From contig NC_086386.1 in the NCBI RefSeq assembly GCF_036588685.1, positions 18,042,001-18,106,000 of the forward strand: DNA of 64,000 nt, read 5' to 3'. The DNA is from Mytilus trossulus (taxonomy: Eukaryota). Made by a program: the position numbers and the translations under genes. Shown here piece by piece: positions 171-62,777 of the stretch; position 1 is the first letter of the stretch, and every line of letters begins with the position of its first letter. The notes below the pieces were generated by a model that had not been told where the DNA came from, ran no database searches, and saw nothing but the letters and a program-made list of their open reading frames with translations.

Positions 171-3100
171 TCACTTCATTTGCATCACTCCTTTCACAAC
201 TAAAGGACCTTGGTCATAAAACAAAAGTGCAGACCACACTGCAAAGTCTAACTGTATTCCAGATTTTGTATAATGTCTAAAATTTTCAGCTAGATCTTCT
301 GCCTTTTGGTGTTCCATGGGCCATTTCAGTACCATTGGGGGATCGAGAACATTCATAAACCAGCATATTTCTATACACTTGTCCATATATTTATTCACAT
401 TAAAATTGTCTTGATATTTTTGAAGGCTCGGACGTAGTTCAGTCGTTTTGAAATCCTAAAATAACCATAAACATTTTAATCATTTTTGATAATTTTATTT
501 CTATCAATATGTTATCAACCATGCTTTAAAAAACAGCTGCATATTTGTTAACCTGCGTTACAAGAAATTTTGAATTGAATTTTGAGACAACCTGCAGCAT
601 ACATTGTGTGTCAATCTTTCGCTTATAGTTATTCTGTCTTGCTTATATAGTTCCCTGTTCCAATCCATTTGTTGTTTTGAGTCAACGGATACTATTTCTA
701 ACTTTCCTATCTTTCTGTAAAAATAACACCATCATCTTTGCACCGTAATATCATCAACAAATTTTTATCATCTACCAATTACTTGATTGCATGTGTAGTC
801 AATAATACATGACATATACATTCCTAAAATATGTAATACAGTTTTGATTGATTGATTGATTGCTTAAAGTCCAGTGGCAAATAGTTCATGCAAGTTCAGG
901 GCGAAGACAGTTTTGAATGATTATCTGCTCTTGAAAATAATTTAGCTTGAGGTAGGAATCTTAATGGTTATTTCTTGAAATGAATTTAATATCGATATAT
1001 AAAACATAAATGTGTCACGAGCGCCGGTAAGCTTTGCGGCACCTATGTTATATACATTACCTGAATCAGAGCCTGGATGCTTAATTTCGCTGTCTCTTTG
1101 ACACAAGTTTTAGCATACCGCTGAAACTTGCTATTGTGTATCACACTCGGATTTGTAACCTTAAAATAAAAAAATCGAACAGATTTGCACACAATGAATT
1201 ACTTCAATTCTATTGGATCTAGATTTAGTATGTATATTCTACATTTCTGACATCTGCTTGCATTTATACAACATCTTATATACTGTTACCAAAATGCAGA
1301 TCAATGTTCATGCATTTGTCAGAAGAAAGTGGTAAATCTAAAGAACAGGACAGACACAAATAATTTAACACATTGCCGAATACTTTCAACTCATTAAAAA
1401 ATACTATTTTCATCTATTAAAGAAACAAGAAACATCACATGATTGATCTTACTGCTCTTGGCGTATTCCCTTAGTACCTCAACCAACACGCAAGTTGAAA
1501 AAAAAGTCGCTACGAAATATATCCTTTTGATTCAGTTAGACCTTCATATTCTATGAATTATTTTTTTTATTAAAACTTCATTTATATACTCCGTACTCAA
1601 CAACATAATGTGTTGTAATGTTTGGCAATAAAACTGTATGTACAGTCTCAGTAAATTCATTGTAGTTTTTCAAGTGAATTGTTGAGGTGATTTTTTTTAC
1701 TATAATGTCTTTGTTTATGCATGGATGTTTAAAATAAACAATCGTACTTTTTCTTTTGTACTGCTTACTGGATCTAACATCGTCTGTTCCAATTGTAGTG
1801 CGATATTGTCTACCAGAGCTGGAACTCGTTTTACTGTATATACGTAAATATTCTAAAACAATATATAAAGTCATTAATAAAAGCTAGGAAAAAAACAACA
1901 TCATAAAAACACGTAACTAGTCTTATATCTTCAGTTCTAGTACTGAATAGCAATAAAACTTCAAACCTTCAAAAGTAAAACATTTTGGAAAAATTCAATG
2001 TCATATTCTTAACTTTTTTTCAATCGATGTAATTCTTCGAGAATTTTCTATTCTTATCGAAAGAAGGTCATATGTTGAACGTAAATTTGACCGTAAATTT
2101 ACCAGATAATGAAGGCGCTCGAGACCAAAAGTATGGGAAGCCATAAAACGTTGATAATCATGGCATTGACTTCCATTTATACATAAAAAGATACTGTTTT
2201 TGTTTTAGTACAATTGCATGAAATACAAAAAATTAAAAGCAACCTAAGATATATATTTTAAGTAATGCTAGTACCTAGGCACTAGATATGGAGCGTCAAT
2301 AGCACATTTGGACTGACAATTCACTTGCAATTGAAAAAAAAAAGCCGACACATAAATTCTTACAAATACACTTTAGTAAAAATTAATAATAATAGTAATA
2401 ATAACTACCCTTAGAACATCATCTAGATAAACAATGATTTCTCTTTCTATATTTTGCTTCTGTCCTTCAAGCCTGGCAATTGCATCAAAAGCGTCTGTCC
2501 ACTCGTTGTCGTACAGTGCAGAGAATTGTTCCGCTACCTTTGTAGGTCTGTTGGTATCAGATATGTCAGTTATCATTGGATTCTGATTATGGATTGAATA
2601 ACTGGCTTCTTGACCTCTTCTGGATGAAAGCAATTAGATATTTATCTCAAACTATAATGTTTTAAACACGACATGGAAACCATCTTAGGTAATGTTCATC
2701 AAACTTGAGAACTAGTTGCATTTGTCATACTGTTATAATATTGCTTATCTTTTTTACTAGTCAATTTAAACAATTAAGACCATTTGGATAACGAGTTGGT
2801 TCATTGCCATTGGCACTAATACCACATCTTCTTATATCTAAGAATGTAAAAAGTACACCCATTCATACCTTTCGGTTATTTCTGTAGTGTTGTGTTGATG
2901 CAGAAGTCTGCTGTTGACCAAATCTTGACCATGCGGTCTATCATCTGCTGTATAATTATCCATAAGCTTGTAAGAGGGGTTCAGTCTGAGAATAAATTCA
3001 ATACTTGTATAAAGAACAAACAGGTTTGATCCTCGAAAATCAACATCGGAAAAAAACACTCTTCTTTTAATAAATATATAATTAGATTTCAGCAGTTTTT

Positions 3101-6100
3101 TTAAGGCAGTTTCAATTTAGATTTGAAATACTTGTAAATCATTTGAAAACTTAACTATCATTTCTTTTCTCAAGATTGAAAATGTTTTCGTTTATTTCTT
3201 TCCGATCAAATATAATACTATTTTCATACTACCTAAATAAAAGACAAGGTTCATGTACTTACAATGAATACGTAACCTCTTTCAACTTCGGTTGCTTTTC
3301 CTTATCATTTGAATCTTTACTTTCCGATGTTGGTAGAACCTGCAAAATCCGTTTTGAAAGTAACATGCATTTCTTTTAGGCTCATAACATATAATAACCT
3401 TCGTTATATCCTAGCATTTTGTTTTATTTCGTAACTCTCGATATGTTTCTAAATCATACTATACAACAAAAGAAACACATAATTTATAGTCTGAGATAAT
3501 CATAGTATTTAATGTATGTAATGGAAAGTATCCGGGGTTAGACTTAATAGAGCAGTTTGCATTCAATGGAAGAGCCTGTTATCCAGTAGTTGTTGGTTCT
3601 TTGCCACATGTCATAACTGTTTTTTGTTTATTTCACCAATTGATTGACTTTTTGATTGTCGGAGCCTTATATAGCATATTCAACGGCAATATGTATGTTG
3701 TTTTTTGCAGGTCGTGTTGTGACCTGTGGTTGTTTTCATCTTTCTTGTCCTGTGGTGCATTGGTTAATAAATGTGGCGTCTACAATCGCTACATCTGCTT
3801 ATTCTAATCAGCGGGGTGAGGAAAATCCGACCACATTTAGTACAGAATATCTTTTCTCTATGTTGATGTAATACATTAATGTAGAACGACTGAAAGGGAA
3901 AAGGAGCGGGTCTGCTGAATGTCTGCATATAGCAATTTAGTGTCTCAATACCAAATCACAATACACATTGACAAGCAACATGCGTTTGATTGGAAACATC
4001 ATACCTGTATAGTGTTATGAAATACATACTACTTTCCATAGCAAAAACTAGCGAAATCCGAATAAAACATTGTAATCTACAAACGAACCTTTTTCTTATA
4101 GAATGATTCAATTATCTGGTAATCAGAAATAGCTTCACTGGCTTTGTTTTTCATGTCTGTGAACTTTCCCTTTTCTGCAAGTTTGATAAGATCTCGTAAG
4201 CCTTTCACCTTTGAAATATAAAACAGTATTGTAACAATTAATGTAAAGGACCGTGAGTTTCTAGAGGTTGAATTGATTGATGTTTTTTCGTCATTCAAAA
4301 GATGTCATAGGCTTGGATTTGTAAGATCGCTTGAAGAGATTGAACTTTTTATATACCTTCAAATACCGAGATGAGCGCCATTAATGTTTTGTCTATTAAA
4401 AGAATGTGTACCAAATTAAAATCAGCTATTTCTTTTGTTGTATATGAACATGTTTAAAATCTATTTTTGTAATTGTCAGTTACTTTGAACTTTTGATTTT
4501 TCAGAACTTCTAAGAGCTAAGTATATTTTCTTTTGCATTCTGTTTGGAAAACATTATATATCTATTCGAGCTGACTTTATTTTTTAAACTCAAGTAAAAC
4601 TGTGAAGATACCGCGTTTTATTTATTTTGTTTCTGGACATTTTTATTTTTTTTGGAATTTCATTTTAAAATAAGATACATTTCTTGTCTAAAAGATAACA
4701 GGATTTTTGCTTCTGAATGTTTTTGAGAAGTAAATGGGAAAAACTAGCATTCTTCGTCAAGAGATCAATTGTCAGAGGCTCAATGACTTTGTACTTAGAC
4801 GACGAAAGTATTCAAAATATACATTTATTCACCAACGATGGAATAGCATTTACTGTATTTTGATCAGGTTAATTTCGGACGTATGTTGTTTAAACTAAAA
4901 CATCTGATATACACAACAATTTTGTTCTGCGCTTTGCTTAATGGTAACATCTTTACAATTTGTTTCATACTTTGTTAGTTGCTTGTAAGTTTTGCTTGAG
5001 CATGCTTAAGATAATTAATCTCACATTTAATTCATCGATGAGTGGAACATTATTTATGATGTCGTCGATAGCAGAAGACGCCCTTTTAGCATCGCCAGCA
5101 GTCGGGTGTGCAACCGGTTTTTGAACATCGTGGATAAATCTGTCCAGAACTGAGAAGGAAAACTGTAACTAAAATTGCAAAATAAAAAGTGAATGTTATA
5201 TTAAGGTACAATTTTATTATTAACCATTTTATCAAGTCACAGTGATACATTGAATATTACTACGAACGAAAAGCAATAAACATTATAACATGTCGAAAAT
5301 GTAAAACGAACATCACCATGTGTCGTCAAAGTAAAAATGTTATATTGAAAAATCAACACAAAGCTGCTACTAAGACAATCATAACTGGAACAGGGAAATA
5401 AAAGTCGGCTCAATTATAAAAAAAAAAAGGATACTTAAACACCGAGCTCCAAGAAAAAAATCAACCGGAAAGTCCCTAATCAAATGGCAAAATCAAAATC
5501 TCAAACACACAAAACGAATAGATAATAAAAAGTAAAATCACAAAAATACTGAACTCCGACAAAAATTCAAGAAAGAAAGCTCATCAAATCGCAAAATCAA
5601 AAGCTCAAACACATCAAACGAATGGTATACAAAAGTCACCTTCTGGACTTGATATCTATGATCATGCCTGCCCCTTATTGATATAGGGTTAGAAATCAAC
5701 AGCTAATTATCCCGTAGAATTAGTTACAGCACGCTTAACAGTTTTTATACAACTGAAGAACGTAATTCTGATCGCTTTTGTCAATAACTTATAATTTAAT
5801 TTACAATGAGATCGGCTACTCCTTATGTAGTTGGGCAAACATCACCACTCAAACCTCAACTACTTCTACTCAAGTACCATTACTTATCATAGATACCGTG
5901 AATACAGTTTGCTGGGTATGCTAAGGATCTAAATGTTTATTGAATATTCGTTAGTTTAAACATATTTTCTTGTTCAAAATGACAAAAGGATCAGACACAA
6001 GTTTTACAACTTAGTAACGTCTTCTCCAAAACAAATACAAAAAATACACATTAATTAATGAACATATGAAATATTTCTTACTAACAAATAATTTAAGAAT

Positions 6101-9647: not shown

Positions 9648-12600
9648 TCATTTCAGCTGCACCACACCTCTAACCATAGTTGGTCCACCCTCATTTAATA
9701 ATAAAGCTGGCCATACACCATGGTCAAAATCAGTCCCAAATTTTGTAAAATATCTAAAGTAATGAAATAATTTGTCTTTAGTTGCATCTGATGGCCAAAC
9801 AAGCACCATAGGAGTCTCCATTACATTGATATTCCATGAAAATTGAGAACAATTGTCAATGAAATTATTCACTTTGTCCAAGCTGAGATATGGTTTGAGC
9901 TGCCGAGAAATCTGCGTTGCTGTAAAGTCCTGTGGTAATACAAAACACGAATGATATCAATAATAACGGAGTCATAAATAAATAAAAAGATTCCTTTCTA
10001 TTTGTTTTCGCAAATATAATCTTGATTATCAAAAAGCTTCCATATTTCTGATTTTTTTTTTTACAAAGTTCATATCAAAAACTATTGGAGATCCGACGAG
10101 AGATAAAGGCAACAAAAACGTAACGATCTGGGGCCGGTTGTTCAACTTGTCGTTAACTTAACGGTAGCGTTAGCCTTAACGTGTCGTTAAAAAGTTTAAC
10201 GTGGCGTTACTTAACGGAAGGTTAAAAAGCTGTTGTTCAAGTTGATTTAACGGTAGCGTTAGCTAACGTGACCGTTAACAAATCTTAACCTGTCGTTAAA
10301 TTTTAACTATGGTTTAGAGGCTATTTTAGTTACCCATAATTCAGATTTTCTGAACTTCCCCCATAAACAAATATGGCCGACTTGTCATCTGCTAGTGCAT
10401 GCAATCAGTCTAATGCTAAGAAAACAAGGGAAAGAAAGCCAAATTTTTCAGAAGCAGAGGTAAATCTTCTCCAAGATGAGGTAGAAAAGAATTATGCAGT
10501 CATTAATGACAAATTTGGAAGTTCTTTGACAAATAAAAGAAAAACTGCAGTCTGGGGAAGAATTTCAGTGATGGTGTCTTCTCTTGGTGTTGCCCATAGG
10601 TCAGCCAAGGAGTGTAAAGATAAATGGGGCAACACCAAGAAAGAGGCAAAGAAGATCTTTTCTGTAAACAAGAGAGACCAGGGGAAAACAGGTGGTGGAC
10701 CACAGGCTAAGCCAGTGAGTGTGGCAGTGCACAGAACCATAGATCTGTGCAAGGACTCTGCTTCCTTCAAGGGCATAGGAGGTGTAGAAAGCTGCATCAT
10801 TGGTTAGCAAAATTTAACGGAGCGTTAGTGCTAACGACAAGTTGAACAACCGGCCCCTGATGTTACTGGCTGAGAAACGTCCCCCATTTTGTGATGAAAA
10901 TACTATGATGGGGTATAGTTTTGGGGATCATATGAAAATTCATTTAAATGTTTTAAGCTAAACTAGCTTTTATTTGATAAATTTTATACTTATGTCTGCT
11001 TCATAGAAAAATACTTTCTTTTTATCCTTATGTTATACTATATGAATACCTCGATCTTATGTGTTCAAATTTATGAAAATAACTTTTTTTCAATTTTGCA
11101 ACATTTAAATCTATGTCAGGCTTACCCTTTCGGAGCACCTGAGATCACCCTTAGTTTTTGGTGTGGTTGGTGTTGTTTATTCTTTAGTTTTCTATGTTGT
11201 GTCATGTGTACTATAGTTTGTCTGTTTGTTTTCTTCAATTTTATCCATGGCTTTGTCAGTTTATTTTTGATTTATGAGTTTGACTGTCCCTCTGGTATCT
11301 TTCGTCCCTCTTTTAGACTGAATGTTTCATCATAATACAGTTCACTTCAATAACTATCTTTTTACAGTTCACATTGTGACAATTCTTCACTTATATGTTT
11401 TTATTCATTCTAGTTTCAATGGTCAAATAGCTATAAACACAAACATAAATGTCTAATACTGCAATATGTACGATCATCATACTATCCTGGAATTTTACCT
11501 TTATTAATAGTGGTAGACTGTAGCGTATTGTATCTCTCACTGCCATCCTCGCATATGGTAAAACTGTTTGGTATTCTCTTTCAGTTGTGTTCACTGTCTT
11601 TGTTGTCTGAAATATACACAAATTAGTTCAAATGCATGACTAGCAGGAATTTGATTCTCAAAACTTGGTATACAATTTCATAAAAATAATTTTGAATGTT
11701 TTTTGTAAAAATCAATAAATGCTCACATGTATATTTCACAAAAATCGAAAGAAAGATCATTGCTGTTTTGCTGTTGGTTTGTTATTTGCGTGCGTAATGT
11801 TTGTTTTCTATTCACCTATAACTGTGTCTGTCATAAAAGTTTATTCTATGTTAAAATAAGTAGACAAAAGTCCAAATGGCGTACCAATTGAAAGTCAACG
11901 TACGGATTTTTACATTGAGCAAGGTAATATGGCATTGCAAGATTTAAAGGACCCGAAATACTATGTAATTATATCCTTATATTGCCAATTTTAGTTTTAG
12001 GTATTGTCTGCACTATGTATGTTGTATAAAATAACGTAAATAAGAAAAATATCCCTATATAAAATTCATACCTCACTGCCAAAGTCAGTCGTTCAAATAT
12101 TCTAACTGACTTTTTTTGTCCTTTTTTACTGAGTAATTGTAGCTGTCCGTCTTTGATTTGATATCTTTATATGTTTTGCTACCTACGTCATGTGTAGAAT
12201 TAATAACATACCAACTACAACTTACAGATGCAGGTGTTCTACTGGACTTCTGCTTGACGATGATTGGTTCTGTGACTATTTTTGTCATGACAGTTGTCAT
12301 TTGTTTTACCTGATTCGTTACCTTAATCTTAAAATAGTCAAATACAAGCTGCAAAAAATAGATATTGTACAGGTGTGATTACATATTATGTTGACACAAT
12401 GTATATAATCTCCAATTTACATAATTTGGGTCGTTTACAAAGTATTTTCAATAGAACATTAAAATTGATAGGAAAATATTTGGACAAAAGTGATTTTCAA
12501 TTTTCTTAAGGTTGACTTGCCTACTATCTTGTTTGTTCCATTTAAATTATTAGATTCAGACATGAAAGATATTTCATAATGTGTATAAGGGAAATGTAAA

Positions 12601-36031: not shown

Positions 36032-37076
36032 CTGCCAATTAGATAGTCTGATGATTTTTATTACTAGTAATATCAAATTATCGGTCTACGTCTAAAAAAG
36101 AGCAAACAGACAACACAAAAATCCATCATACACTATACCGTATACGTGTGGCCTACTATACTTTGATATGTTTTATATAATATATATGAATTTATAACAT
36201 AATAATTTACAAATCATTAAAAAAGTAAGGTTCAACCTCATACAAAGTTTACTGTAGATGAATTTGACCATTTTTATGTCCCTTTCTGTCATATAGCACC
36301 TGATGTGTCGAATCTGTTACATATCCCTGGCTTTCTAAAGTTAAGTTTTTTTTATCGTTCCTGGTGAAGTTAAATCCCGGAAACGCGATCTCAATGACTT
36401 ATATTTACTAATTTTGCAATCGGTTTATGCACACTGTCAAATAACAATGAAGCGTCCAGGTTTATAGTATGTTATATAGAAATCAACTTATTTGCAGTTT
36501 AATGAATATGATAGACATGGGCATAACTGTAAGTTGCTTGCTCTACTGTACTGAGTTCCTTCTACATCACAATGAAAATACCAAAAATAAATGCACTCCT
36601 TTCTCAGTTTAATGCTGCACCCTCAAAGACCTTGTTTTATTTCATTTGTATACAAAGTGTAATTGTAATTGCCATTGAAAAAATTAACCTATATTTTGTT
36701 CCAGAAATAACACAAATTTTGTACCTTTGCATAAAAAATACTCACCGTTCATTTGATTATGGATACATATTTTACAAATACATGCCAAATCAAAAACAAA
36801 ATGGTGTGGACTTTCTATTATTAATAAACAATGAAATTAGATATCACCTTTACCAAAGTTACCATTTTGAATAAGTTAGTTCGTTTCGCTACAATACAAG
36901 CGATTAATTTACAATTGAACAATACCAAGATATACGGTTTAGCGTTTCGTTATATTTAAACAATACATTTATAACCAGAAAACCTACATGTATTTAAAAC
37001 CGATATTGTGTCCTTCAAACTTTTGTTTTGTTAATCCAGAAAAATCTAAACTGTTCTGCTATTTCAAAGTTGCATA

Positions 37077-37783: not shown

Positions 37784-37785
37784 TG

Positions 37786-46600: not shown

Positions 46601-47367
46601 CGGAATACTAGTTTTAACTTTTGTGTAGACATTTTGCATTTTGTTCGATTTTGCAATCCATATTCTGTGGATATTTATCATTTTGTTTCAATAAACTTAT
46701 TAACGAAATTATTCGTTTCCTATTTTTTAACACTTACATTGTCCCCCTCAAGTTGAACATACAGTTTTTGTATACGTTGCAGTGATATAAATTCAAGCAT
46801 TGCGTTTCTCCATGCTGATCTTCGGTGTCTCTCGGCTGTTTTCAAAACTTGATACAGTTTGCTGACAGACAGAGTTGGGAACTGCGCTTCGCTGACATAA
46901 ACTTTATCATCATTCTTAACCAGGCTTCGAAACTGCATGAAATAGATGAAAAATAAATAGTTCAAGATGATGTCTGACAATAATAAAAAAAATAACTACA
47001 AAGTTCGTTAAAGTCAAATTCTTCAAGAGATTAGGAAATTCATTGGTATTATCACTTTAATTATTCATGATAGATAGTCAAATATTGTGTTCATGTATAT
47101 CAATGACTAGAAGATTTCTGAAAGCATGGTCATATTTCAATTAATCTATTAAAATTCAATTCAACTAACCTGTTCCGGGTACTTTGTATGGAGGAGGTTC
47201 TCCGTCTTTAGGAGGTCAATGTACTCGTATTTAGCAGCATCTAATACATGTTTAGGATAAAACACTTGCATATCCTGTACAACAGTTTCTATATTCAGTC
47301 TCGGTGAATAGTCGGATGACAAGTTGATATACTTGGCCCTCACCGGTACCAACGCCATTGAATACAT
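43671..47367 (-). CDS. G6: MIEAP-like domain protein, N-terminal class B, ~440 aa, 7 coding exons
   Basis: Exons 47367-47170, 46932-46738, 46224-45998, 45724-45526, 45233-45126, 44882-44766, 43949-43671. All GT-AG, open frame of 1323 nt. Motifs IAEKFALVFENEWKAAY, CVELIWYMCVQDPSMILRW, VWPALYLHDAGLMLKRG. Confidence 0.87.
44080..44422 (-). mobile_element. tRNA-headed SINE (central Deu/Nin-like domain, tentative)
   Basis: The minus strand starts GGAGTGCCGTGGTGTAGTGGTTAACGCATTGGACT (A-box, tRNA-like). The body is shared with copies at 6910-7202, 48340-48410 and 61530-61622. Confidence 0.65.
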
Positions 47368-50197: not shown

Positions 50198-53100
50198 TTA
50201 CATGGGAACAGCAAATCCTTTACACAGTACTGGTCCTTTGATATGCATTAACACTGCTGGCCATACAGGAAAGTTCACATTGAATCCCTTTCTGTTGTAG
50301 TATTTATACAATGTGGTATCAAATGTTTCTCCTTGCTGAGGCCATTCTAACGACATAGGTGGTTCTTGGTTTAACATTAACCATATGGTTTCTAGACATC
50401 TCTCAGTAAACGTTGATACTTCTGGTGTTTTCAGATGTACTTTATAGTCAGGCAAACTTTCCAATAGTTCATTGAATTTCTGAAAGAGAAATTATAACGT
50501 AAACGAAATATCAGATTCAAACAGGAGCCAAAAAAAAGGGCTGTCTTACTTATTGCCCTCAAAAAGGTTAATAGAGTAAACCTTATACGGAGACTGGTGG
50601 TGTAAAAACTTACTAGTGTTGGACTAAAGCCTTGCATAATACACTAGCTCCTCTATTGTTTTACTGTAGTTTTATTTCAAGACATATTTGATTTGTATGT
50701 GTGTCGATATTTCTTAAATATATACAATTCGTATGTAAACGTGTGTGAACGTAGAAAATGTGTTTCTTCAGTTCTGATTCCTTTTACAAATAATATATAC
50801 CGAAAACCAGTCCATTAAACAATATACACGGTAGATGTATGGTTCCTTCTAACGACATCTCATACTCCAGTAGTTCATTTATGATTGTACAATTTTACTC
50901 GAAAAAAGATATAACTAAAACCTTAAAAATCATTTTGCAAAATTATGTAAATGTATTTTTATGCAATCTTGATCTAGAAAATAATATATATTTGAATTTA
51001 CTAACATCCAATAGATTAGTAATGGTGACTGTACAATGCCGTTTACGGAATAATCTTGCCAGTCGTTCTGCATCAGTATGAAGGATTTTAATGTCGTTTG
51101 CTGACACCTTTCGTTGTACCTAAAATAATACAATAAAACACAAAACTAAATATCAAATTAACCGAATCTAATACGATTTGTCTTTTTTATGTAGTGTTAA
51201 AAAATAACAATAAAGGGAGCCTATAACACTGTGCGGGACAAATTTGCCATTCCGGTATCGGCAAATCTGACTTTGTCGGTTTACAAGATATCAACATCAA
51301 AAATTTGCCCAGTGATAGATTATTGAAAAATTAAAAACATGCCATATGTCCCAACTTGTCACTCTTGTCACTGCAGCTGATTAAAAGTACATTTCCCATG
51401 GGAAATTTGATAATTCCCATGGGAATATTAGAATTTCCCATGGGAACATTGGAAGTTCCCGTGGGAAAAATTACTTTTCCCATGGGAAGTTTAGAGTTCC
51501 CATAGGAACTTTAAAGTTCCCATGGGAACATAAGTAAATTGTTTGTTCTCATGGGAAGTTCTAAATTTCCCAAGGGAATTTTTCTTCCCAGTCTATTCTA
51601 CCCCTTCTCCCAGTCCGAAGTGAACGTGCACCAGTAGGTCCATATTAGTGATTGCCTTAAGTCAGATCCGAACGAGTTTTATCTTTTTCGGAATTTAATG
51701 CTTATTGAAGATCTCATGCTATTAAATACCGTATGTATACATGTTCATTTTTTTACATAAATAAGGTCGTTAGTTTTTCTCGTTTGAATTGTTTTATATT
51801 GTCTTATCGGGGCCTTCTATAGCGGACTATGCGGTATGGGCTTTGCTCATTGTTGAAAGCCGTACGGTGACCTATTGTTGTTAATGTCTGTGTCATTTTA
51901 GTCTTTTGTGGATAGTTGTCTCATTGGCAATCATACCACATCATCTTTTTTATATGTTGACCAATATCGTTTGAGTCCTTGGATGTAACACCTTATTGGT
52001 ATACATCTAATGTATTGTAATGCTTTTGAAGCAACACTTAACTCATTAAATAAAAGCTTACAAAAGAGGTAAACGCTATAATTATGGAATTGAGCATTCC
52101 AAGTATCCATGCAAATGATCCTGGTTGACATATGATTTGTTTTTACATATATATGTAAAGTAGGATCTGCTTAACCTCTTGGAATAACTGCGATCACCCC
52201 GAAGTTTTGGTGGTGTTCATGTTTCTCAGTTTTTAGATTCCTATGTTGTGTTTTGTGAACTATCAATTGTCTTTTTTGTCGTTTTTTTCTTCTTTTTTAG
52301 CCATGCTGTTGTCAGTTTAGTTAATTTTTTACTTATGAGTTTGAACATCACTTTGCTATCTTTCGTCTCTCTTGTAAAGTGTGCCTCCGTCAGTGATATT
52401 TTAATGTATTTAAAAATCTGACATAAGGATGAATAACATTAAAACTCGAACTTACGTTAGAATGTTGAGTTACACAAGGTTGTATAACCTGATCTGTCAT
52501 CAAGCTGGTAATGTTTTCTACTTGTTCAGCAGCTACGGAATTCACCAATTTATAGCATTTCTGTAAATGGAAAAGACAAATAGTTCCTGTATTACTATGG
52601 TATGATGGAATATTCCTTTATTTGTTACGTTAACTATTCAGGAAAATATGAGTATGATTGATTAGTGTTGCAGAATGTTTTAGTAATTTTTTGGGGTTTC
52701 AGTTTGTAAAGCATTGTCAATTGTATTGATTTATCTTGCATTGAACGGTATAGTAGCTTTTGCTATATCCACACATATTTGCTTCACAACAATTTACATT
52801 CAGGCATATTGCAACGAAGCACACAAACCAAAAACCAAAACACACAAAAAAATGTTGACGTCATAAAATAAAATATCTGACGCCACAATGGAAAAGTGAT
52901 TGTTGTATGCGTCAAAAGTTCAAGCGGCCGGGTAAGCCGTGATCAGCGATAAGGTGTATACTAATAATTGAATTGTAGTATAGGAAATCTTTCTGAACAA
53001 ATACTTGAAATGCTACGTCTATACTAATATACTAATATTCATGTTAATGTTTGTGTCATTTTGGTCTTTTGTGGATAGTTGTCTCATTAGCAATCATACC

Positions 53101-55690
53101 ACATCTTCTGTTTTACATGTACCTTTATTATTTGCATAAGACTGTACAAAGCTACATCTTCTGTAAGTCTATCTTGATGTCTACTTATCAATGTTTCGAC
53201 AGCTAGTTTATATTCATTGTCATATACATTGATGAATCTTTGAGCAATTCATTGTATAGTCTACAGATCCTGGATTATCATCACAAGTACAACTGCTTAG
53301 TCTGTAAAAATATATAAAACAGGTTACAAATACAGTTTTCCGTATAAAAGATTATGAAATATAAATTGTTTAGGCAACTCCTCGAACAGTATAAATTTAT
53401 GCATGAGCAATAATTTAACAAACAACACCAAATCATGAAATAATAATTATGAAATATTCAGATAGTATAATAGGTTACTGGTGTAACAATTTTGGAAAGA
53501 AAATGAAAAAAAAAAATCCATTCTCAATTTTAAATTATAGGTATGAACTTGTAATAACTCGGAAGTCTCTTATATAAAGTTGATCGTGAACGGTTTTATT
53601 GTTTGTGTTTTTACTAGTGTCTATGTATTTTTCTTATTTTGTGTTATACCATTGTCAGATTCAGACTTGTATGTATATATATTCATGTATAATAATGTTT
53701 TTAACAATTATTTTTTTTCAGAAAATATAAAGTTTGAAACATAAAAAAAAATGTTTTTGGCGCTTAAATTTAACTCGACAGATCGATTGGGTTTCCTTCC
53801 TTCCTATCTTATATGTTTAGTAAATTTAAAATACAAATAAAGAGCTTCTCTCACCTAGCCTTTAAATTTTGAAGAATATCTTGGTTTTCTCTATCAAGGT
53901 TTCTTAAGGACATTATTTCGTCTGTCTGAGTCTGTAAGAGATCTCTAAGGTGTTTATTTTGAGCTGTTAACGATTTCTGGTCTTGTGAGTTATAAACTGG
54001 AGCAACTTTCATCACTGGTTTACTTTTGAAGATTCGAGATTCAAATATATCCGGGGCCGGTCGAAGTTTAATTTCTGATTGACTACTTCGATTTGATATT
54101 GATGGTGATGTGGTTGAATCAATTATATTGAATATTGGTTTCTCAGTTGCGACAAAATCCCGTGGTGATTTTCTTGATTTGATATTTGGTTCAGAAAGAA
54201 TACGTCTTGGTGTGCTTGCGGACTCATTCTGTCTTCTGTTGTCTGGCTCCGGTGACTTTGGTACATGAACAGTGTGTGGCGCTCCAAACAAAGGGGGATC
54301 TGCTTCCGGTTTATCTGTTAAAGATGTACTATATGGTGGTTTACTTATTAATGTTAATGAGGATGAAGAACTGTCTGCAGGAGCTGTCTCTGCTCTTGAT
54401 ATTGGAGGTAAAATTCGTGGACTTTCGTAAAACTGAAAGACAATTTTTTCTTAAAATTCATTTGATTTTGATAGTGATGATATAAAGGGTTTATATTCAG
54501 GGATTTATTTTGGTAAGTTTAGATTTTTGCTCATATCTATATATTTAATTCTAATAATCGAAGGCAGAGTAAATGATATCTTTATTTTTATCGACATTTC
54601 ATATGTATTATCTCCTTCGATTTTATTAAAATATATTAATTCGTGATAAATCTTCAGGTGAGGAATTTAAAAATCGCAAAATGTGCATTACTCATTCCAA
54701 TTCAGTAAAAAATGTTGAAGCTGGTACTTACACCTTTAAATTTTTCTAAATCATAATAGTCTTCTTTTAATTTACATAACAACCAATATTCTTTCATAGC
54801 TTCTTCATAACTAGAAGAACTCTTTCTGTCACATATGGCCCGATACAGAGGAGTTGACAATGCCCAGTCTTTGTCTGTTGGTTCTTCTCCTCTATATTTC
54901 TCTGTAATTTCTGTATACTGCAATTGAAAACAAAATTAATGGAAATGTAGTAAAAAAAACTCATCAAAGATACAAGGCTATCAACATTGTACGTCAATCG
55001 TCCGTTTCATCTTTAAAAGAACCTAATGATCAAGTATTGTACAAATTGAAAAAATATTGTGAACCAAACATTCCGAAAAATTGTATTTTAACAAATTAGG
55101 CATATCAAGATGTTCGCTTTCAGTAGAACATAGATTTCTGGGAAAAATAAACTAGCTGTATATATTTTTAATTGTTTTTATTATTATACAGCGAAGAAAA
55201 GTGCACATATTACAAGTTTTACTTCCAATGATTGAAGATACCACAATCCTCTTCTCCAATCTACATTTTTTACAATTTCAATAGATATCACAAAGAGTGG
55301 AAACAATGTATTTTTGTAATACCATTGTGTTAAAGTTGTTGTGCTACGAGTAACATTTTTTTTTTGCAGAAAGATGCAATATTAACTCGTGTATTCATTT
55401 CTGTAAATACCTTACAGGTTAGTTGTAAATAACAGGAACATATTTTGCAAGTTGTATCATAGAACTAATGTTAAACTTTTAGAACTAATTAGAAATACAC
55501 ATCTATAGTTTACGTTACTAATTATAGATACCCTGTTTCTGTATTTTACTTCAAATTCTCGTTCAGTCTGTAGAAAGCTGATGTAATCTCGCTGAACTCT
55601 CGGATCGAAGTTATAGTAAAATAATATTCTGTCAATATTTTGTCTTCTTTTATATCCTGATGGTATTTGATATTTCCCAAGTTGTTCCAT
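50198..55690 (-). pseudogene. G7: MIEAP-like domain gene, class B, frameshifted in exon 4 (pseudogene, null allele or assembly error)
   Basis: Exons 55690-55532, 54917-54732, 54432-53855, 53301-53123, 52560-52456, 51119-51006, 50479-50198 total 1603 nt, which is not a multiple of 3. Exon 4 begins RLSSCTCDDNPG in one frame and continues IAQRFINVYDNEYKLA in another. Read-through hits TGA at 53222-53220. The other exons are open, including CLETIWLMLNQEPPMSLEW and VWPAVLMHIKGPVLCKG. Confidence 0.78.
51393..51578. repeat. Array of nine 12-bp palindromic TTCCCATGGGAA-type units at ~21-bp period
   Basis: Units start at 51393, 51414, 51435, 51456, 51477, 51497, 51517, 51546 and 51567, with non-identical 8-9 bp spacers (one of 17 bp). 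Four units carry a single substitution. Confidence 0.9.
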
Positions 55691-58062: not shown

Positions 58063-61000
58063 TTAAACTGGTTGAACGTATCCTTTTTTGATTAACGGTC
58101 CTTTCTCATGAAGGTAAACTGCAGGCCACACTGCATGCTTAACTATTGAACCTTGTTTCTTATAAGGCATATATATTGCCTCATTAAATACGTCATTAGG
58201 TTGAGGCCATCCTAGTGTCATTGGCGGATCCTGTATTGCCAGTAACCATAATACTTCAACTATTGAATTCACAAAAGCTTCTATTTCTGGGGAATGTCGA
58301 TAGTTGTATTTTGGATTACGCAATAAGTCTCCGTCTTTGAATTTCTGCTAGAGAAAATATATGTAAAAATAGTTAATATTTTTTTATTTCATAGCAAACA
58401 AATAAATAAGAAGGTAAATATCATTTCAACAAATTCTCAAATTTAGGACTAAGGCATAAATGTACATGTTACCACTGAATTCAACATAGAGGTATTGAGG
58501 CAAATTATTGTTAGATAGTCATATTACTGCCAAGAGTATGTCTCATACACCACCCATTAACTTTAGTAGTGCTGTTTTATTTGATATTTTGAATTATCAT
58601 GGTATGAAGTACTGGCAGTCGTAGAAAACCTCAGAAAGACTATATATGACTACTAATAGTCATCTGGAAGTGACATTTATGTACATAGGGGAAACATCAA
58701 ACAGACTGCAAAATCTATACGGTAAATTCTTTAAATGAATAGCTCATTTTGCAATAATCAGAACTAATTTATTGATTAATAGTTTGTCGTCATGTTTAAC
58801 AATAAGCAGTATTACATTAAAATTTTCTTTAATGTAAAGAAAGACAAAGACCATTTAAACAAACAAACCAACATTGCTTTGTGTATAATTTTAAAATGTT
58901 TATCTTGATTGTAACAGTTTTACCTGTGTGGCTTGTACAATTGTTTGTGCATGTTCTGCTTTTCTCATTCGCTTCAGCTCTCTCATCAATGAGTCCGGTA
59001 TTCTCTTTCGCTGGTCATACTTAACACTTCGTAAATCTAGGATCTGTAAAATTGAAGCGCAACATTTAAAATTACCTCATATCGTTGTATACTTCGGATT
59101 TCTCATATATGTTCGAACAATGGATCTGGTCATGTGTTGTTGTTTGTCTCTGTTTACTGTTTTTTTTTTTCCCAGAGAACTCAGTTATGTTTTGTTGGTG
59201 TTGTCTGTTGGTCCATAAAGTGTATTTGGCGATTCTAGTTAAAAGTGTTTGTATAACATATATACACAAACATACAAACCGCGAGAAATGGGTCTTCTAA
59301 ACCTTTTTCTATACTAAAAGACAATTTCTGGAGTTGGTCAGTGGCAAATTGACGACAAAATTCATAGCCATTCTGAAACATAGAAACGGGCAATATGATT
59401 AGAATGTGAACCTTATTAACAAATACCAAAATTTATATGTTTCCCTTATAAACCTAAAAGGACGTTTAATTTGATACCAACATGTTTGAAAGGGTTTTTT
59501 TTCTCAAGAAATCCATTCACATTTGCAAGGACTTTAACTTATCAAATGATTTACTTTGTGAATACTGTTCGTGGTAAATAATATCAAATTTGTTCTTTTT
59601 TCATAAAGTATATGACCCGAGGACATAAAATATTAGTAAAACAACTTATATCTTTACCTGTACAATGTTCATAAGTAGTGAGATACCCTCTTCCTCATTA
59701 GATTCCACTTTGTTAGCAGTAAGTGATTTTAGGGCCTTGGACCATTCTACGATGAATATAGAGTTGAATTCTTCAGATATCCGGGTTGGGGTATAGTTAT
59801 CTGTATACAATACACTGGGTCCACCATCTAATTCTCGACTAGCAGTTTTACTCAGCCTACATGAAATATGACAAAATATCATCAATAAATTGTTGATGAT
59901 TACTTGGAAAAATAAATACATGTGTAAATCACAACTAGTATACCACGACCAACACAAGGCCGTACGGTGACCTATAATTGTTAATGTTTGTGTAATTTTG
60001 GTCTTTTATAGATAGTTGTCTCATTGGCAATCATACCACATCTTCTTTTTTATACAATCAATCTTATAATAAGGAATATGCTTATAAGTTCCATACCAAC
60101 AGTGTACCATTCGTGAGTGAAATTGAGAAAAACAAATCCGAAGAAAACTAAAAGTTTCTGAAATAGTAAGATTTTGTCTAATGCTTAGTTTGTTTCTGTG
60201 TGTGTGTTACATTTTAATAGTGTGTCGTCATTCTCCTTTAATATTTAATGCGTTTCCCTCGGTTTTGGTTTGTGACCCGGATTTGTTTTTTCTATCGACT
60301 TATGAGTTTTGAACATCGGTATACTACTGTTGCCTTTATTAGGGCATTTATAAAAAATATATAGTGTGATAATAACAAACCTGTTTCTTAAGTCATCTAT
60401 AACTTTGTTACATTCGTTCACTTCTGTCTGTAGTTTACTAACAATATCATTCTGTAACGATATTCTACTGTTGGATTCCTGGTACATTGGCTGAGGGTAG
60501 TATATTACACCGTTGATTCTTATTGGAGTGTTTGGCACCTCTCTGGTCGATGGTGTTCGTTCTAGGTCTTTACTTCTTGGACTAAAATATTCCGGTCTAG
60601 ATCGAGGGCTTAAAGAATCGGAAACGTCTTGATATGTTTTTTGCTGCGGTCCTTTCTACAGAAAAGAGTGTACGGATTAGCCTCCTTATGCAAATGCATA
60701 ACATGTCTTTCCGTTAATATTGAAATGCTTTTTAAAACATAGAATAGTTGATTTTTTTAACATTGCCATACTAGCGGGAGGTTTGGCTAGCCATATAAAC
60801 CGACCGATTTTTCATTAAAATCTGCTGTACCAAGTTACAAATGGGCAATTTGTTTTAAATAGTTCGTTTTTATATATGTTGGCGATTGTCTTTGTAGCAG
60901 TTTAGTTTTTTTGCTGTTTCGTTGTTTTTTCCTCGCGATCGTGTTTTGTTTGTGACCTGTTTTTTTCTCTCTTAAAGTTAAATCGATGTATCACTTTTGA

Positions 61001-62777
61001 ACAATGTTATACTACTGTTGTGCATATGTTTTTTTCCTTAAAGTTTATGTTTTTCCCTTGCGATCATGTTTTGTTGGTGACCCTTTTTTTTCTCTTAAAA
61101 TTAAATCGATGTATGACTATTGAACAGTATTATACTACTGTTGCGTATATGTACCGTCAATTTTATGTAATGGTCCTTCACATCGTGTAAAAATCTACAC
61201 TCTTCAATAGCTGTGTGTTGTATCTGCATTCTGTACTTAATGTACGATTCATTCAAAAGCCTGTACAATATACTGTCAGGGTAACCAGTGGAGTATTCTG
61301 TAAGATCATTATCTTTACGGAGTCTCCGTCTGTCCACCAGATACTTATACTATAATGCGATAAATAACAAAATTGTATGTCAGCTCAGAACTTCAAAGCA
61401 CATGTTTAAATGTTGGAAATGAGGTTATTTTCATTAACTTTTTAAATCAACTGATAACAGCTTAACTCTTGCATGTTATTTTTTAAAAACTTTGATGATA
61501 CAATAATTACAAAATATCTCTTCAACATTAGGCAGCACTCGCACCTGCAAAGTGGAAAGGGGTTGATATAAGTTGCAATAAATTGTTTCCCAATCCACTA
61601 AAAGTTAATATGTTTAAACTAACAACAAGTGTGTCAATGTAATGTGGTTGCTGAAATGATTACTTGTTAGACATATTTAAGAGGAATAAACATAGTTTTA
61701 TATGACACAAAAGCATTATAACAGGCGAATACAGGTTGGATCATTGTTGTTTTGCCTGATCTGTTTCATCGGTTTTAATAACGTTTTTTCAATACTTAAA
61801 GATTCCGATTGCAATGCATTTTTGCGTATCTATCTGTTTGCATCAATGTGACAAGCGTACATGTTAACCTTAATCGTATAAACTACTCTGTTTAGACTCT
61901 GTATTTTTTTATGCCTTAACAAGAACCTTAAACGTGTTTATTTTGACCTTTTCAACTTTTTACGTTGACTACAACATGTATATTAAGTTATTGCAGAATC
62001 TCATGTCAAGCTTATAAAGTAAATTGACTTAGGAGTAGATAATGTCACAGAATTTCAATCCCAACATGAGTTCCTGCGTATTAGTATAATTAATCACGGA
62101 CAACGAATCCTTGGCAAAATATAATGCCTGGGCAAATTTTATGGATATGTGTCAAAATGTTCATCAGTACAATTTTGAATATTTATTGAATCATAGAAAA
62201 ATAGGGTTGAACAGGGTTTGCACCTAATGGTATGCTAAAAATTAACAATCCATATAAAATCGAATGACTAATGTTTTGTTTTATTTCTTCAAACCTTGAG
62301 AACAACTTTTAAACAATTATAGTCCATATGCTTACAATTCATGTGTCAACAAATAGATGCATGTAACATATTGTAATTGCTCATTTTCATAAGTTTTCAG
62401 AAGATTTTCATCTATTGATATATATATATATATATATATTGTAAAGTTTTATGAATATTCTAAATTAATTAGCATATGTTAAAATACTAAAATAGTACAT
62501 GCAAAATATCAAATCATAAAAATACAAATTGTTCAGTGTCTGAGAAAACTTGTAAGATTTCCACAGCTACTTTTGCTCAAAGGGTGCAATTTGGGTACTG
62601 TTACATTAATCATAATACCATTGTTGGATCTCTAACAGATAGTTCTTGGTCCATCCTCAGAAGATCGTAATACTCTTTAACAGCATTTTCGAACATCCTG
62701 GTATCAACTGGGTAACGTAAAACTTGTTCTATACCTGGTTGAGATCTACAACCATGCGGTATCCGAATTGACGCCAT
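58063..62777 (-). CDS. G8: MIEAP-like domain protein, class B, ~440 aa, 7 coding exons
   Basis: Exons 62777-62619 (MASIRIPHGCRSQPGIEQVLRY..., absent from the ORF track), 61349-61155, 60655-60381, 59856-59658, 59372-59280, 59043-58924, 58344-58063. All GT-AG, open frame of 1323 nt. Motifs ISEEFNSIFIVEWSKAL, VLWLLAIQDPPMTLGW, VWPAVYLHEKGPLIKKGYV. Confidence 0.87.

What the first reader, a model, noticed from the sequence alone, without database searches (positions are those of the whole stretch)
171..62777. Eight-gene tandem array of deeply diverged MIEAP-domain proteins with a modular N-domain/linker/MIEAP design
Seen: eight spliceable genes occupy the whole window. All end in the same four-exon module (terminal exon 279-315 nt; exactly 282 nt in G2, G3, G7 and G8), entered through a phase-2 intron with phase-0 introns inside the module. 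Introns share no visible similarity beyond TE copies, and the proteins keep only anchor motifs, so the array is old and seven copies have stayed open. Known: vertebrate SPATA18/MIEAP is a single p53-inducible mitochondrial quality-control gene. Inference: this is a diversified repertoire with a constant C-terminal effector or membrane-binding domain and variable N-terminal/linker specificity modules, laid out like an innate-immune or organelle-surveillance gene cluster. I know of no functional description of such a cluster.
Basis: partly seen in the sequence, partly recalled or inferred. Interest (0 to 1): 0.9.

Follow-up and report, generated by a model that had tools for sequence, protein, structure and literature searches.

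The report
Mussel MIEAP-domain gene cluster

Summary
There are eight genes, seven on the minus strand and G3 on the plus strand. Each ends in a four-exon MIEAP (PF16026) module. Terminal exons are 285/282/282/291/315/279/282/282 nt. A phase-2 intron leads into the module and phase-0 introns lie inside it.

- **Transcription:** spliced RNA contigs from four public runs reproduce the G3 and G4 junctions exactly.
- **Selection:** 19 of 21 listed exon differences fall at third codon positions, which points to purifying selection.
- **Breakage:** G7 has a broken frame in its first module exon. The other seven modules are open.
- **Source:** the window lies on a Mytilus trossulus chromosome. The genes are already in RefSeq as "uncharacterized protein" and in UniProt as "MIEAP C-terminal domain-containing protein".

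The array is not self-contained. At least 85 MIEAP exon hits occur in this genome, about 66 of them on this chromosome, and the array continues on both sides of the window. Regan et al. 2021 reported about 53 MIEAP genes per bivalve against 0.6 in other animals. This scan also noted neighbouring MIEAP arrays on adjacent DNA.

A tree of the terminal exons matches the two N-terminal classes (G1-G5 and G6-G8). That indicates whole-gene tandem duplication, not module shuffling. I found no immune domains and no evidence of diversifying selection. Function is inferred only from vertebrate Mieap. A weak GrpE-like fold resemblance remains a lead.

The parts
171..5168 (-). G1, class A MIEAP-domain gene. 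Exons: E1 about 5162-5025, E2 4208-4089, E3 2966-2869, M1 2619-2409, M2 1852-1748, M3 1159-1061, M4 455-171. The first coding exon was not found.
   Evidence: M4 and M1 come from tblastn and Pfam. M2 was read from the DNA and M3 from the exon-candidate HMM scan. E1-E3 are inferred from ORFs, splice sites and weak similarity to G3. There is no RNA or orthologue support for the N-terminal exons.
9648..15463 (-). G2, class A gene. Exons: E0 15463-15416, E1 14606-14445, E2 14106-13990, E3 13561-13470, M1 12906-12705, M2 12348-12226, M3 11606-11499, M4 9929-9648.
   Evidence: Spliced alignment to P0011 (M. californianus XP_052077007, about 81% identity) with GT..AG introns in phases 0, 0, 2, 0, 0, 0. 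P0011 passes Pfam MIEAP at 32.4 bits over positions 2-194 of 195.
16073..22585 (+). G3, class A gene and the only one on the plus strand (RefSeq LOC134696575). Exons: E0 16073-16087, E1 16786-16944, E2 17459-17578, E3 18207-18322, M1 19500-19695, M2 19879-20001, M3 20419-20523, M4 21079-21360. The 3' UTR runs to about 22585.
   Evidence: Exons match P0152 (M. trossulus XP_063414500.1); the terminal exon is 100% identical. Spliced contigs in 3-4 runs join 19695|19879, 20001|20419 and 20523|21079, and contigs cover the 3' UTR. P0006 scores 56.9 bits on Pfam MIEAP over positions 1-193.
22680..27795 (-). G4, class A gene, sister of G3 and tail-to-tail with it. Exons: E1 about 27795-27670, E2 27143-27033, E3 ending at 26288 (phase 2), M1 25674-25464, M2 24944-24840, M3 24227-24126, M4 23702-23412. 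The 3' UTR runs down to about 22680. The first coding exon was not found.
   Evidence: Spliced contigs in all four runs join 23702|24126, and three runs join 24227|24840. M4 scores 38.1 bits on Pfam. E1-E3 are inferred. G3 and G4 are sisters at 98/91 support.
31394..36085 (-). G5, class A gene. Exons: E1 ending at 35876, E2 35531-35412, E3 34949-34609, M1 34043-33815, M2 33079-32975, M3 32505-32407, M4 31708-31394.
   Evidence: M4 is. M2 was read from the DNA and M3. E1-E3 are inferred from ORFs and splice sites. There is no RNA or orthologue support.
43671..47367 (-). G6, class B gene. Exons: E1 47367-47170, E2 46932-46738, E3 46224-45998, M1 45724-45526, M2 45233-45126, M3 44882-44766, M4 43949-43671.
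   Evidence: Spliced alignment to P0008 (M. californianus XP_052076785, about 94% identity) gives phases 0, 0, 2, 0, 0, 0. Pfam MIEAP scores 55.3 bits. In this genome's RefSeq annotation the gene is split into two models, P0165 and P0166.
50198..55690 (-). G7, class B gene with a broken frame. Exons: E1 55690-55532, E2 54917-54732, E3 about 54255-53855, M1 53301-53123, M2 52560-52456, M3 51119-51006, M4 50479-50198. The M1 frame shifts near 53256-53250, with a stop at 53251-53249, and the conserved NRPTK motif is missing.
   Evidence: M4 gives the best Pfam score of the eight, 54.9 bits. M1 is 179 nt, which does not fit a phase-2 entry with a phase-0 exit, and the two halves read in different frames. 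E1 and E2 resemble P0017 and G8. No second copy of this stretch exists in the assembly. The break was not checked in reads.
58063..62777 (-). G8, class B gene. Exons: E1 62777-62619, E2 61349-61155, E3 60655-60381, M1 59856-59658, M2 59372-59280, M3 59043-58924, M4 58344-58063.
   Evidence: Spliced alignment to P0013 (M. coruscus CAC5376515, about 83% identity) gives phases 0, 0, 2, 0, 0, 0. Pfam MIEAP scores 48.7 bits over positions 2-194.

Best explanation
**What it is (shown).** The window is a 64-kb stretch of a much longer tandem array of MIEAP-domain (Pfam PF16026) genes on one chromosome of the mussel Mytilus trossulus. The array belongs to the bivalve-specific expansion of the Mieap/SPATA18 family.

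**How it arose (shown).** The eight genes came from old whole-gene duplications in place. They form two subfamilies: G1-G5 (class A) and G6-G8 with their downstream neighbours (class B). G3 and G4 are an inverted sister pair.

**Gene state (shown).** All eight keep one exon-intron plan: N-terminal exons, a phase-2 intron, then four MIEAP exons separated by phase-0 introns. At least G3 and G4 are transcribed and correctly spliced. Their MIEAP exons evolve under purifying selection. G7 is broken in this assembly.

**How it works (inferred).** Each protein has a helical N-terminal part, a disordered hydrophilic linker, a long helix, and then a well-folded basic MIEAP domain made of five long helices and a small C-terminal beta sheet. 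This is the layout of vertebrate Mieap, whose structured C-terminal half binds cardiolipin-type phospholipids and whose N-terminal disordered and coiled-coil half recruits client proteins into condensates. The most likely function is therefore a set of scaffold or adaptor proteins that share one binding domain and differ in partners, tissues or conditions through their N-terminal halves. Nothing here tests that function.
For: **Family membership:** Pfam hits on exons and on the full-length orthologues.

**Gene models and phases:**

**Transcription and splicing:** four runs from three coded organisms give contigs without introns. Their joints sit exactly at 19695|19879, 20001|20419, 20523|21079, 23702|24126 and 24227|24840.

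**Purifying selection:** 19 of 21 listed exon differences are at codon position 3, and 16 are synonymous.

**Species and annotation:**
- The contig length 81,773,519 equals that recorded for M. trossulus XP_063414500.1, and its exons match.
- Orthologues are named in M. galloprovincialis, M. edulis, M. californianus and M. coruscus.

**Scale of the family:**
- At least 85 MIEAP exon hits in the genome, about 66 on C14, with neighbours at 17.99-18.03 Mb and 18.12-18.19 Mb.
- 1,392 clusters at 50% identity match the terminal-exon profile.
- Representative proteins come from scallop, clams, oyster and zebra mussel.
- The published orthogroup OG24 has 807 genes, 53.1 per bivalve against 0.6 elsewhere (PMC8382680).

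**Duplication history:** in the terminal-exon tree the window genes and neighbours form one clade (98/91), with G1-G5 (98/91) and G6-G8 plus neighbours (98/85) as subclades. Class B N-terminal homology is supported by G6 against G8 at E 2e-4, G8 against P0017 at E 1.6e-5, and G6's N-terminal part against an oyster protein at E 8.8e-12.

**Protein anatomy:**
- AlphaFold model of a family member has mean pLDDT 91.5.
- In the G3 orthologue model the MIEAP domain scores 80-97 and the N-terminal part and linker 35-60.

**Vertebrate mechanism:** PMC10845071.
Against: The functional part rests only on domain homology at 25-35% identity or less to anything studied.
- The window genes are not orthologues of SPATA18. 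A closer canonical-type copy sits on another chromosome (C4:72.43 Mb, 102.7 bits) and branches far from them.
- The mussel MIEAP domains are not markedly hydrophobic (GRAVY -0.26 to -0.49), unlike the description of the vertebrate C-terminal half.
- No localisation, lipid-binding or expression-condition data exist for these genes.

The evidence also has gaps.
- Expression was checked for G3 and G4 only.
- The N-terminal exons of G1, G4, G5 and G7 are inferred without RNA or orthologue support.
- The codon-position count uses only the 40 best-supported of 173 differences that the tool listed.
Confidence: 0.75

Rival explanations
1. The array is a diversified innate-immune or organelle-surveillance repertoire. 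The MIEAP domain is a constant effector or membrane-binding end, and the N-terminal and linker parts are fast-evolving specificity modules that recognise different targets.
For: - The family is very large, lineage-specific and clustered (PMC8382680).
- The N-terminal parts and E3 linkers are the least conserved regions between orthologues. For example, G3 E3 is about 67% identical against 92% for M4.
- The same genome has intronless B-box + MIEAP genes on C2 (L001). That is a TRIM-like arrangement in which the C-terminal domain is usually the target-binding part.
Against: - The four orthologues and 37 long family members carry no immune signalling, recognition or death domain.
- The window genes lack the B-box.
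- Listed coding differences in the MIEAP exons of G3 and G4 are mainly synonymous.
- One-to-one orthologues of G2, G3, G6 and G8 persist across Mytilus species. Class B architecture is shared with oyster. This looks like long-term retention, not rapid birth and death.
- The domain tree matches the N-terminal classes, so there is no sign of module exchange.
- The only published expression note is enrichment in gills of another mussel (PMC5549309).
Confidence: 0.12
2. The MIEAP domain is a GrpE-like module of long helices plus a small beta domain. The expanded MIEAP proteins would then act as co-chaperones or exchange factors for the equally expanded bivalve HSP70/HSPA12 family.
For: - GrpE chains are the top Foldseek matches of the high-confidence domain model: 3a6m at E 0.09 and probability 0.51, followed by six further GrpE entries.
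- GrpE is the only family whose match spans the helices and the beta part (model residues 27-258; 1dkg Z 6.5, 4ani Z 6.0).
- An HSPA12-like gene lies inside the same array at C14:18,170,974-18,172,029, between two MIEAP genes.
- On C14, 6 MIEAP hits lie within 20 kb of an HSPA12-like hit against 1.07 expected under circular shifts (P about 0.03).
- Both families are among the most expanded in bivalves (PMC8382680).
Against: - The scores are within noise for helical models. The rmsd is 10-13 Å, TM is 0.24-0.33, and Z is below 8.
- There is no sequence or profile similarity to any solved structure.
- The window itself holds no HSP70-type gene.
- The proximity test is marginal (P 0.03-0.08) and both hit lists are lower bounds.
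- No binding prediction or assay was run.
Confidence: 0.08
3. The array is mostly decaying duplicates, meaning pseudogenes or annotation artefacts without function.
For: - G7 has a broken frame and has lost a conserved motif.
- RefSeq splits G6 into two partial models in this genome.
- Introns are full of dispersed repeats.
Against: - Seven of eight modules are open despite only 25-35% identity between copies.
- Splice sites and phases are conserved.
- G3 and G4 give spliced transcripts in several runs.
- Third-position bias in the listed exon differences.
- Orthologues are conserved across species.
Confidence: 0.03

Closest known systems
Bivalve MIEAP orthogroup expansion (OG24 of Regan et al. 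2021, Genome Biol Evol, PMC8382680)
   Same: It is the same family and phenomenon: dozens of MIEAP-domain genes per bivalve against about one in other animals. The window genes' closest relatives are MIEAP-domain proteins of Mytilus, oyster, scallop, clams and zebra mussel.
   Different: The paper reports orthogroup counts and ancestral duplications only. It does not describe the chromosome-level concentration, which here is about 66 of 85 or more exon hits on one chromosome. It also does not describe the shared exon-phase plan, the two N-terminal classes or the inverted G3/G4 pair.
Vertebrate Mieap/SPATA18 (p53-inducible; forms mitochondrial condensates that bind cardiolipin; PMC10845071)
   Same: Both have a C-terminal Pfam MIEAP domain preceded by a hydrophilic, partly disordered, helical or coiled-coil N-terminal half.
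   Different: The mussel genes are paralogues, not orthologues; a more canonical copy lies on another chromosome. They are shorter (about 370-440 aa) and have unrelated N-terminal sequences. p53 control, mitochondrial location and lipid binding are all untested.
B-box + MIEAP genes of the same genome (G000:C2:83.75 Mb, L001)
   Same: They carry the same C-terminal MIEAP domain over model positions 2-194.
   Different: They are intronless, about 785 aa long, and have an N-terminal B-box zinc finger in a TRIM-like layout. The window genes have introns and no B-box.
GrpE nucleotide-exchange factor fold (PDB 3a6m, 1dkg, 4ani)
   Same: The overall build is similar: long helices followed by a small C-terminal beta domain. 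GrpE gives the best, though weak, structural match.
   Different: There is no sequence similarity, the rmsd is 10-13 Å and Z is about 6. This is a resemblance only, and membership is not shown.

Membership tests
MIEAP domain family (Pfam PF16026) | Match to the Pfam model above the gathering score of 27 bits | tested here: met
   Terminal exons alone score 38.1 (G4), 39.7 (G6), 54.9 (G7) and 41.8 (G8) bits. Seven of the eight terminal exons are over the cut-off in the genome scan. Full-length orthologues score 56.9 (G3), 55.3 (G6), 32.4 (G2) and 48.7 (G8) bits. G2's terminal exon alone was not listed.
MIEAP domain family (Pfam PF16026) | Whole domain present (model positions about 1-195) at the C-terminal end of the protein | tested here: met
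   Coverage is 1-193, 3-191, 2-194 and 2-194 of 195, ending within 5 residues of the C-terminus in P0006, P0008, P0011 and P0013. For G1, G4 and G5 it is shown exon by exon only. In G7 the first part of the domain is disrupted.
Mieap/SPATA18 orthologue (the single-copy metazoan gene) | Closest relative of canonical SPATA18 in its genome | tested here: not met
   The best Pfam match in the genome is on another chromosome (C4:72,426,976-72,427,323, 102.7 bits). In the terminal-exon tree that copy branches away from the window clade.
Mieap/SPATA18 orthologue (the single-copy metazoan gene) | p53-inducible expression, mitochondrial location and cardiolipin binding | not testable with these tools
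   These properties are known for the vertebrate protein (PMC10845071). No comparable data exist for the mussel genes.
Bivalve MIEAP expansion | Lineage-specific multi-copy family in bivalves, with the closest relatives in other bivalves | tested here: met
   There are at least 85 exon hits in this genome. Named relatives come from Mytilus species, Magallana/Crassostrea, Argopecten, Mya, Ruditapes, Dreissena and Mercenaria. The published counts are in PMC8382680.
TRIM-like or innate-immune receptor repertoire | Presence of a recognised immune or ubiquitin-ligase domain (RING, B-box, TIR, death-fold, NACHT, lectin) | tested here: not met
   MIEAP is the only Pfam family above its cut-off in the four orthologues. 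No immune-type domain appears in 37 long family members. A B-box occurs only in the intronless copies on C2.
GrpE-like fold | Significant structural superposition on GrpE that includes the beta domain | tested here: inconclusive
   Foldseek gives E 0.09 and probability 0.51. VIA-align gives Z 6.0-6.5 at rmsd 10-13 Å over 132-136 residues. Both are below the tool's stated noise level for helical models.

The most novel reading that the evidence does not exclude
The MIEAP domain is a GrpE-type partner of Hsp70-class ATPases. Bivalves would then have co-expanded, partly on the same chromosome, a matching set of MIEAP adaptors and HSPA12/HSP70 chaperones. The variable N-terminal halves would direct each pair to different clients or organelles. 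This would give the widely conserved but structurally uncharacterised Mieap domain a biochemical activity, and it would link the two largest 'stress' gene expansions of bivalves.
Probability: 0.07. Interest if true: 0.75.

Novelty: new member of a known kind. Interest (0 to 1): 0.33.

Why it matters
Bivalves carry tens of MIEAP-domain genes where other animals have one, and no one knows what the extra copies do. This window gives a clean, checked example of how the family is built and maintained. It shows one conserved exon-phase plan, two subfamilies made by local whole-gene duplication, real splicing, purifying selection and one decayed copy. These verified gene models give a firm basis for expression, population and biochemical work on stress tolerance in mussels. 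As a discovery it is modest, because the family expansion is published and the genes are already annotated. The weak GrpE-like fold and the nearby HSPA12 genes are the only hints of something new.

Tried and rejected
**Structure and remote homology**
- **Foldseek against PDB:** neither AlphaFold model gave a match at E <= 0.001.
- **VIA-align against 48,161 chains:** the lists were filled by helical-hairpin matches to the non-MIEAP N-terminal helices, with Z no higher than 9.2, which is uninformative.
- **Profile search of PDB sequences:** nothing meaningful (best E 0.019, an Smc coiled coil).
- **ESM Atlas:** the MIEAP domain with PF16026 excluded gave only unnamed fungal clusters at 0.85-0.90. 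The class B N-terminal part gave no usable hit.

**N-terminal domains**
- Pfam finds no family in the N-terminal parts.
- Class A homology between G2 and G3 is not significant by BLAST (E 6.4; tblastn E 0.46). It rests on a shared short motif and on equal E2 exon lengths.

**Other features in the window**
- Rfam at gathering thresholds and ARAGORN found nothing.

I therefore had no orthologous DNA, no formal dN/dS and no synteny comparison. The codon-position count from read laying stands in for these.
- Complex prediction was not used, because the report does not claim binding.

**Tests with weak or no result**
- Proximity of MIEAP and HSPA12 genes on C14 is only marginal (P 0.03-0.08).
- A search for a second copy of G7's broken exon found only an ~80-bp dispersed repeat.

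**Handling of spliced models**
Searches used single exons by reference, or public protein ids.
- Junctions were scored only inside a local script.

Full report
**What the window is**

The window has 31% G+C and no N runs. It is G000:C14:18,042,001-18,106,000 of a 1.30-Gb assembly. Contig C14 is 81,773,519 bases long. That is the contig length recorded for the Mytilus trossulus RefSeq protein XP_063414500.1 (P0152), and the exons of that protein match the window, with the terminal exon 100% identical. So the window is a M. trossulus chromosome and gene G3 is RefSeq LOC134696575.

**Checking the observation**

tblastn with four ORFs that resemble MIEAP C-termini found exactly eight terminal exons, seven on the minus strand and one on the plus strand. 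I extended each frame to its stop and to the first in-frame AG with a pyrimidine tract.

Pfam MIEAP (PF16026) support is as follows:
- The four terminal exons tested directly score 38-55 bits against a cut-off of 27.
- Seven of the eight are over the cut-off in a six-frame scan of the genome.
- A profile of the eight exons, searched against 1.84 billion representative proteins, found 1,392 clusters at E <= 0.001.
- Among these were near-orthologues of four window genes: P0006/P0152 for G3, P0008 for G6, P0011 for G2 and P0013 for G8.
- These public proteins cover the Pfam model at positions 1-194 of 195, at their C-terminal ends.

**Gene models**

Protein-guided junction finding gave GT..AG introns for G2, G3, G6 and G8. 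The N-terminal exons are separated by phase-0 introns. A phase-2 intron leads into the first MIEAP exon (M1), and phase-0 introns separate M1, M2, M3 and M4.

For G1, G4, G5 and G7 I located M2 and M3 with an HMM built from 42 family proteins, scanned over all AG...GT phase-0 exon candidates, and by reading the DNA. I located M1 and the preceding phase-2 donors by frame and splice-site logic.

Module exon lengths (M1/M2/M3/M4, in nt):

| Gene | M1 | M2 | M3 | M4 |
|---|---|---|---|---|
| G1 | 211 | 105 | 99 | 285 |
| G2 | 202 | 123 | 108 | 282 |
| G3 | 196 | 123 | 105 | 282 |
| G4 | 211 | 105 | 102 | 291 |
| G5 | 229 | 105 | 99 | 315 |
| G6 | 199 | 108 | 117 | 279 |
| G7 | 179 | 105 | 114 | 282 |
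| G8 | 199 | 93 | 120 | 282 |

G2 and G3 also have a very short first coding exon (48 and 15 nt). I did not find the corresponding exon in G1, G4 or G5.

Searches used single exons by reference, or public protein ids. Junctions were scored only inside a local script.

**RNA evidence**

I laid Logan contigs from four runs, from three coded organisms, on 19400-25399. They lack the introns and join:
- 19695|19879, 20001|20419 and 20523|21079 in G3;
- 23702|24126 and 24227|24840 in G4.

These are the predicted borders. The contigs also cover about 1.2 kb and 0.7 kb of 3' UTR. Intron bins have zero depth, apart from one dispersed repeat. This confirms transcription and splicing of G3 and G4 and independently confirms my models for G4's M2 and M3.

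**Selection**

As a substitute I classified the 21 differences that read laying listed inside confirmed G3 and G4 exons. Nineteen are at codon position 3 and 16 are synonymous. The caveat is that the tool printed only the 40 best-supported of 173 differences.

Approximate per-exon amino-acid identity to orthologues shows M4 as the most conserved part and E3 and M2 as the least. For G3 the figures are E3 67% and M4 92%. For G8 they are M2 65% and M4 91%.

**Broken copy**

G7's M1 begins at a good acceptor (53301). It reads RLSS...NPGSVDYT in one frame and IAQRFINVYDNEY in the next, with a stop at 53251-53249. It lacks the NRPTK motif that is nearly invariant in the family, and its 179-nt length does not fit the phases. 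The assembly has no second copy of this exon. So G7 is a probable pseudogene, at least in this haplotype.

**Divergence and repeats**

Terminal exons are 25-35% identical to G7. A blastn of the window against itself finds only one exon-to-exon match, G3 M1 against G4 M1 at 74% over 131 nt. Everything else is 80-440-bp dispersed or palindromic repeats in introns and spacers.

**Wider context**

The array is not confined to the window.
- The genome scan lists at least 85 MIEAP exon hits, and the tool states this is a lower bound. About 66 are on C14.
- Four terminal exons lie just upstream (17.99-18.03 Mb) and four just downstream (18.12-18.19 Mb). Further clusters lie at 21-26, 39-47, 50.8-50.9 and 71 Mb.
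- Two intronless B-box + MIEAP genes lie on C2 and another intronless copy on C5.
- The best canonical-type match lies on C4.

A maximum-likelihood tree of 48 terminal exons places all eight window genes in one supported clade (98/91). This clade splits into G1-G5 (98/91) and G6-G8 together with the copies at 18.116, 18.152, 18.164 and 71.10 Mb (98/85). G3 and G4 are sisters (98/91), and the upstream neighbours form a separate clade (99/90). The alignment has only 95 columns, so deeper forks are unresolved.

The split matches the N-terminal classes:
- G6, G8 and the G7-like P0017 share a detectable N-terminal domain (E 2e-4 and 1.6e-5).
- G6's N-terminal part also matches an oyster protein (E 8.8e-12), so class B predates the mussel-oyster split.
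- Class A is supported only by a short motif and by equal E2 lengths (120 nt in G1, G3 and G5).

Because the domain tree and the N-terminal classes agree, the array grew by whole-gene duplication and divergence. It did not grow by recombining N-terminal modules with a constant domain.

**What is already known**

- Regan et al. 2021 list a MIEAP orthogroup of 807 genes, 53.1 per bivalve against 0.6 in other taxa, with duplications in the bivalve ancestor (PMC8382680).
- Gerdol et al. 2017 note over-representation of the Pfam domain among gill-enriched transcripts of another mussel (PMC5549309).
- RefSeq and UniProt already hold these genes as "uncharacterized protein" or [quoted passage not shown] in five Mytilus species.
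- I found no paper on the function, structure or genomic organisation of the expanded copies.
- Other first-stage notes of this scan describe neighbouring MIEAP arrays on adjacent DNA.

**Protein anatomy and likely mechanism**

An AlphaFold model of the G3 orthologue gives pLDDT 80-97 for the MIEAP domain and 35-60 for the N-terminal helices and the E3-coded linker. A model of a 258-residue family member (P0129, from a scallop) has mean pLDDT 91.5. It shows long helices followed by a six-strand beta unit of about 50 residues.

E3-coded linkers are 30-148 aa, 60-74% disorder-promoting residues, with GRAVY about -0.5 to -1.2. The MIEAP domains are basic, with pI 8.1-8.8.

This layout parallels vertebrate Mieap. 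There the structured C-terminal half is proposed to bind cardiolipin-type lipids, and the N-terminal disordered and coiled-coil half to engage client enzymes in condensates (PMC10845071). My best functional inference is therefore a family of scaffold or adaptor proteins with a shared binding domain and paralogue-specific partners. This step is inferred and has not been shown.

**The GrpE lead**

Neither model has a significant structural neighbour in PDB, and VIA-align scores stay at or below the tool's stated noise level. The best Foldseek rows for the domain model are seven GrpE entries, the top one at E 0.09 and probability 0.51. GrpE is the only match that spans both the helices and the beta unit (Z 6.0-6.5, rmsd 10-13 Å). 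This is weak.

After seeing it I found that two other first-stage notes propose the same resemblance and point to an HSPA12 gene in the array. I confirmed an HSPA12-like ORF at C14:18,170,974-18,172,029. On C14, 6 MIEAP hits lie within 20 kb of an HSPA12-like hit against 1.07 expected (P about 0.03; 0.08 at 50 kb). This is suggestive only, and I keep it as the novel case.

**Verdict**

The interpretation as a new, self-contained immune-like cluster is not supported. The window is a representative stretch of a known, annotated, bivalve-wide family expansion whose function remains unknown.

Noticed in passing
window 10373-10807 (+): A 144-aa single-exon ORF with a Myb/SANT-like DNA-binding domain (PF13873, E 3e-19, 69 bits). 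It lies inside the last intron of G2, antisense to it. It is probably derived from a transposon.
   Followed up: partly
window 53041-53120; also 37976-38061, 51873-51957, 59956-60059: A dispersed repeat of about 80 bp starts just after the donor of G7's exon M1. More than 40 copies at 91-99% identity lie on nearly every chromosome. ARAGORN and Rfam do not recognise it.
   Followed up: partly
window 23840-23920 (intron between G4 M3 and M4): A short repeat reaches summed contig depths of 3,900-8,700 in all four RNA-type runs, while neighbouring exons reach 10-40. Many contigs end in it, so it is a very abundant element in transcriptome assemblies.
   Followed up: no
window 11030-11335 (+), 13069-13314 (-), 13732-13944 (+); related DNA at 37368-37498, 52169-52376, 57292-57450: A repeat family in the introns carries an ORF with a cysteine-rich hydrophobic motif (…CCLFFSFLCCVMCTIVCLFV…). 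Three copies lie inside G2 alone.
   Followed up: no
window 19595 joined to 24946 on opposite strands (run X3): One contig joins G3-type M1 sequence to G4's M2. G3 and G4 M1 are 74% identical in DNA here. The join could be an assembler chimera, or a G4 allele in that organism whose M1 resembles G3's through gene conversion.
   Followed up: no
window 43671-47367 (G6): RefSeq for this genome splits G6 into two partial models. XP_063415881 (296 aa) reads on from M1 into the intron to 45457. XP_063415569 (147 aa) starts inside M2. In four other Mytilus species a single protein of 437-440 aa is annotated, and the window's exons are all open.
   Followed up: partly
G000:C2:83,751,880-83,757,506 (L001 2381-4738 and 6718-8007, minus strand): Two adjacent intronless MIEAP genes. 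One, of 785 aa, has an N-terminal B-box zinc finger (PF00643, E 1.2e-6) in a TRIM-like architecture. A third intronless copy of 665 aa lies on C5 (L002).
   Followed up: partly
G000:C14 as a whole: C14 is 6.3% of the genome. It holds about 66 of the 85 or more MIEAP exon hits, about 41 of 116 HSPA12-like hits, and most of the intronless canonical HSP70 genes (43.76-43.79, 54.19-54.21 and 57.93 Mb).
   Followed up: partly
window 57485-57916 and 51383-51582: A 442-bp imperfect palindrome (76% self-complementary) lies in the spacer between G7 and G8. A 21/42-bp tandem palindromic array (TTCCCATGGGAAATTTGAAG) lies in a G7 intron.
   Followed up: no
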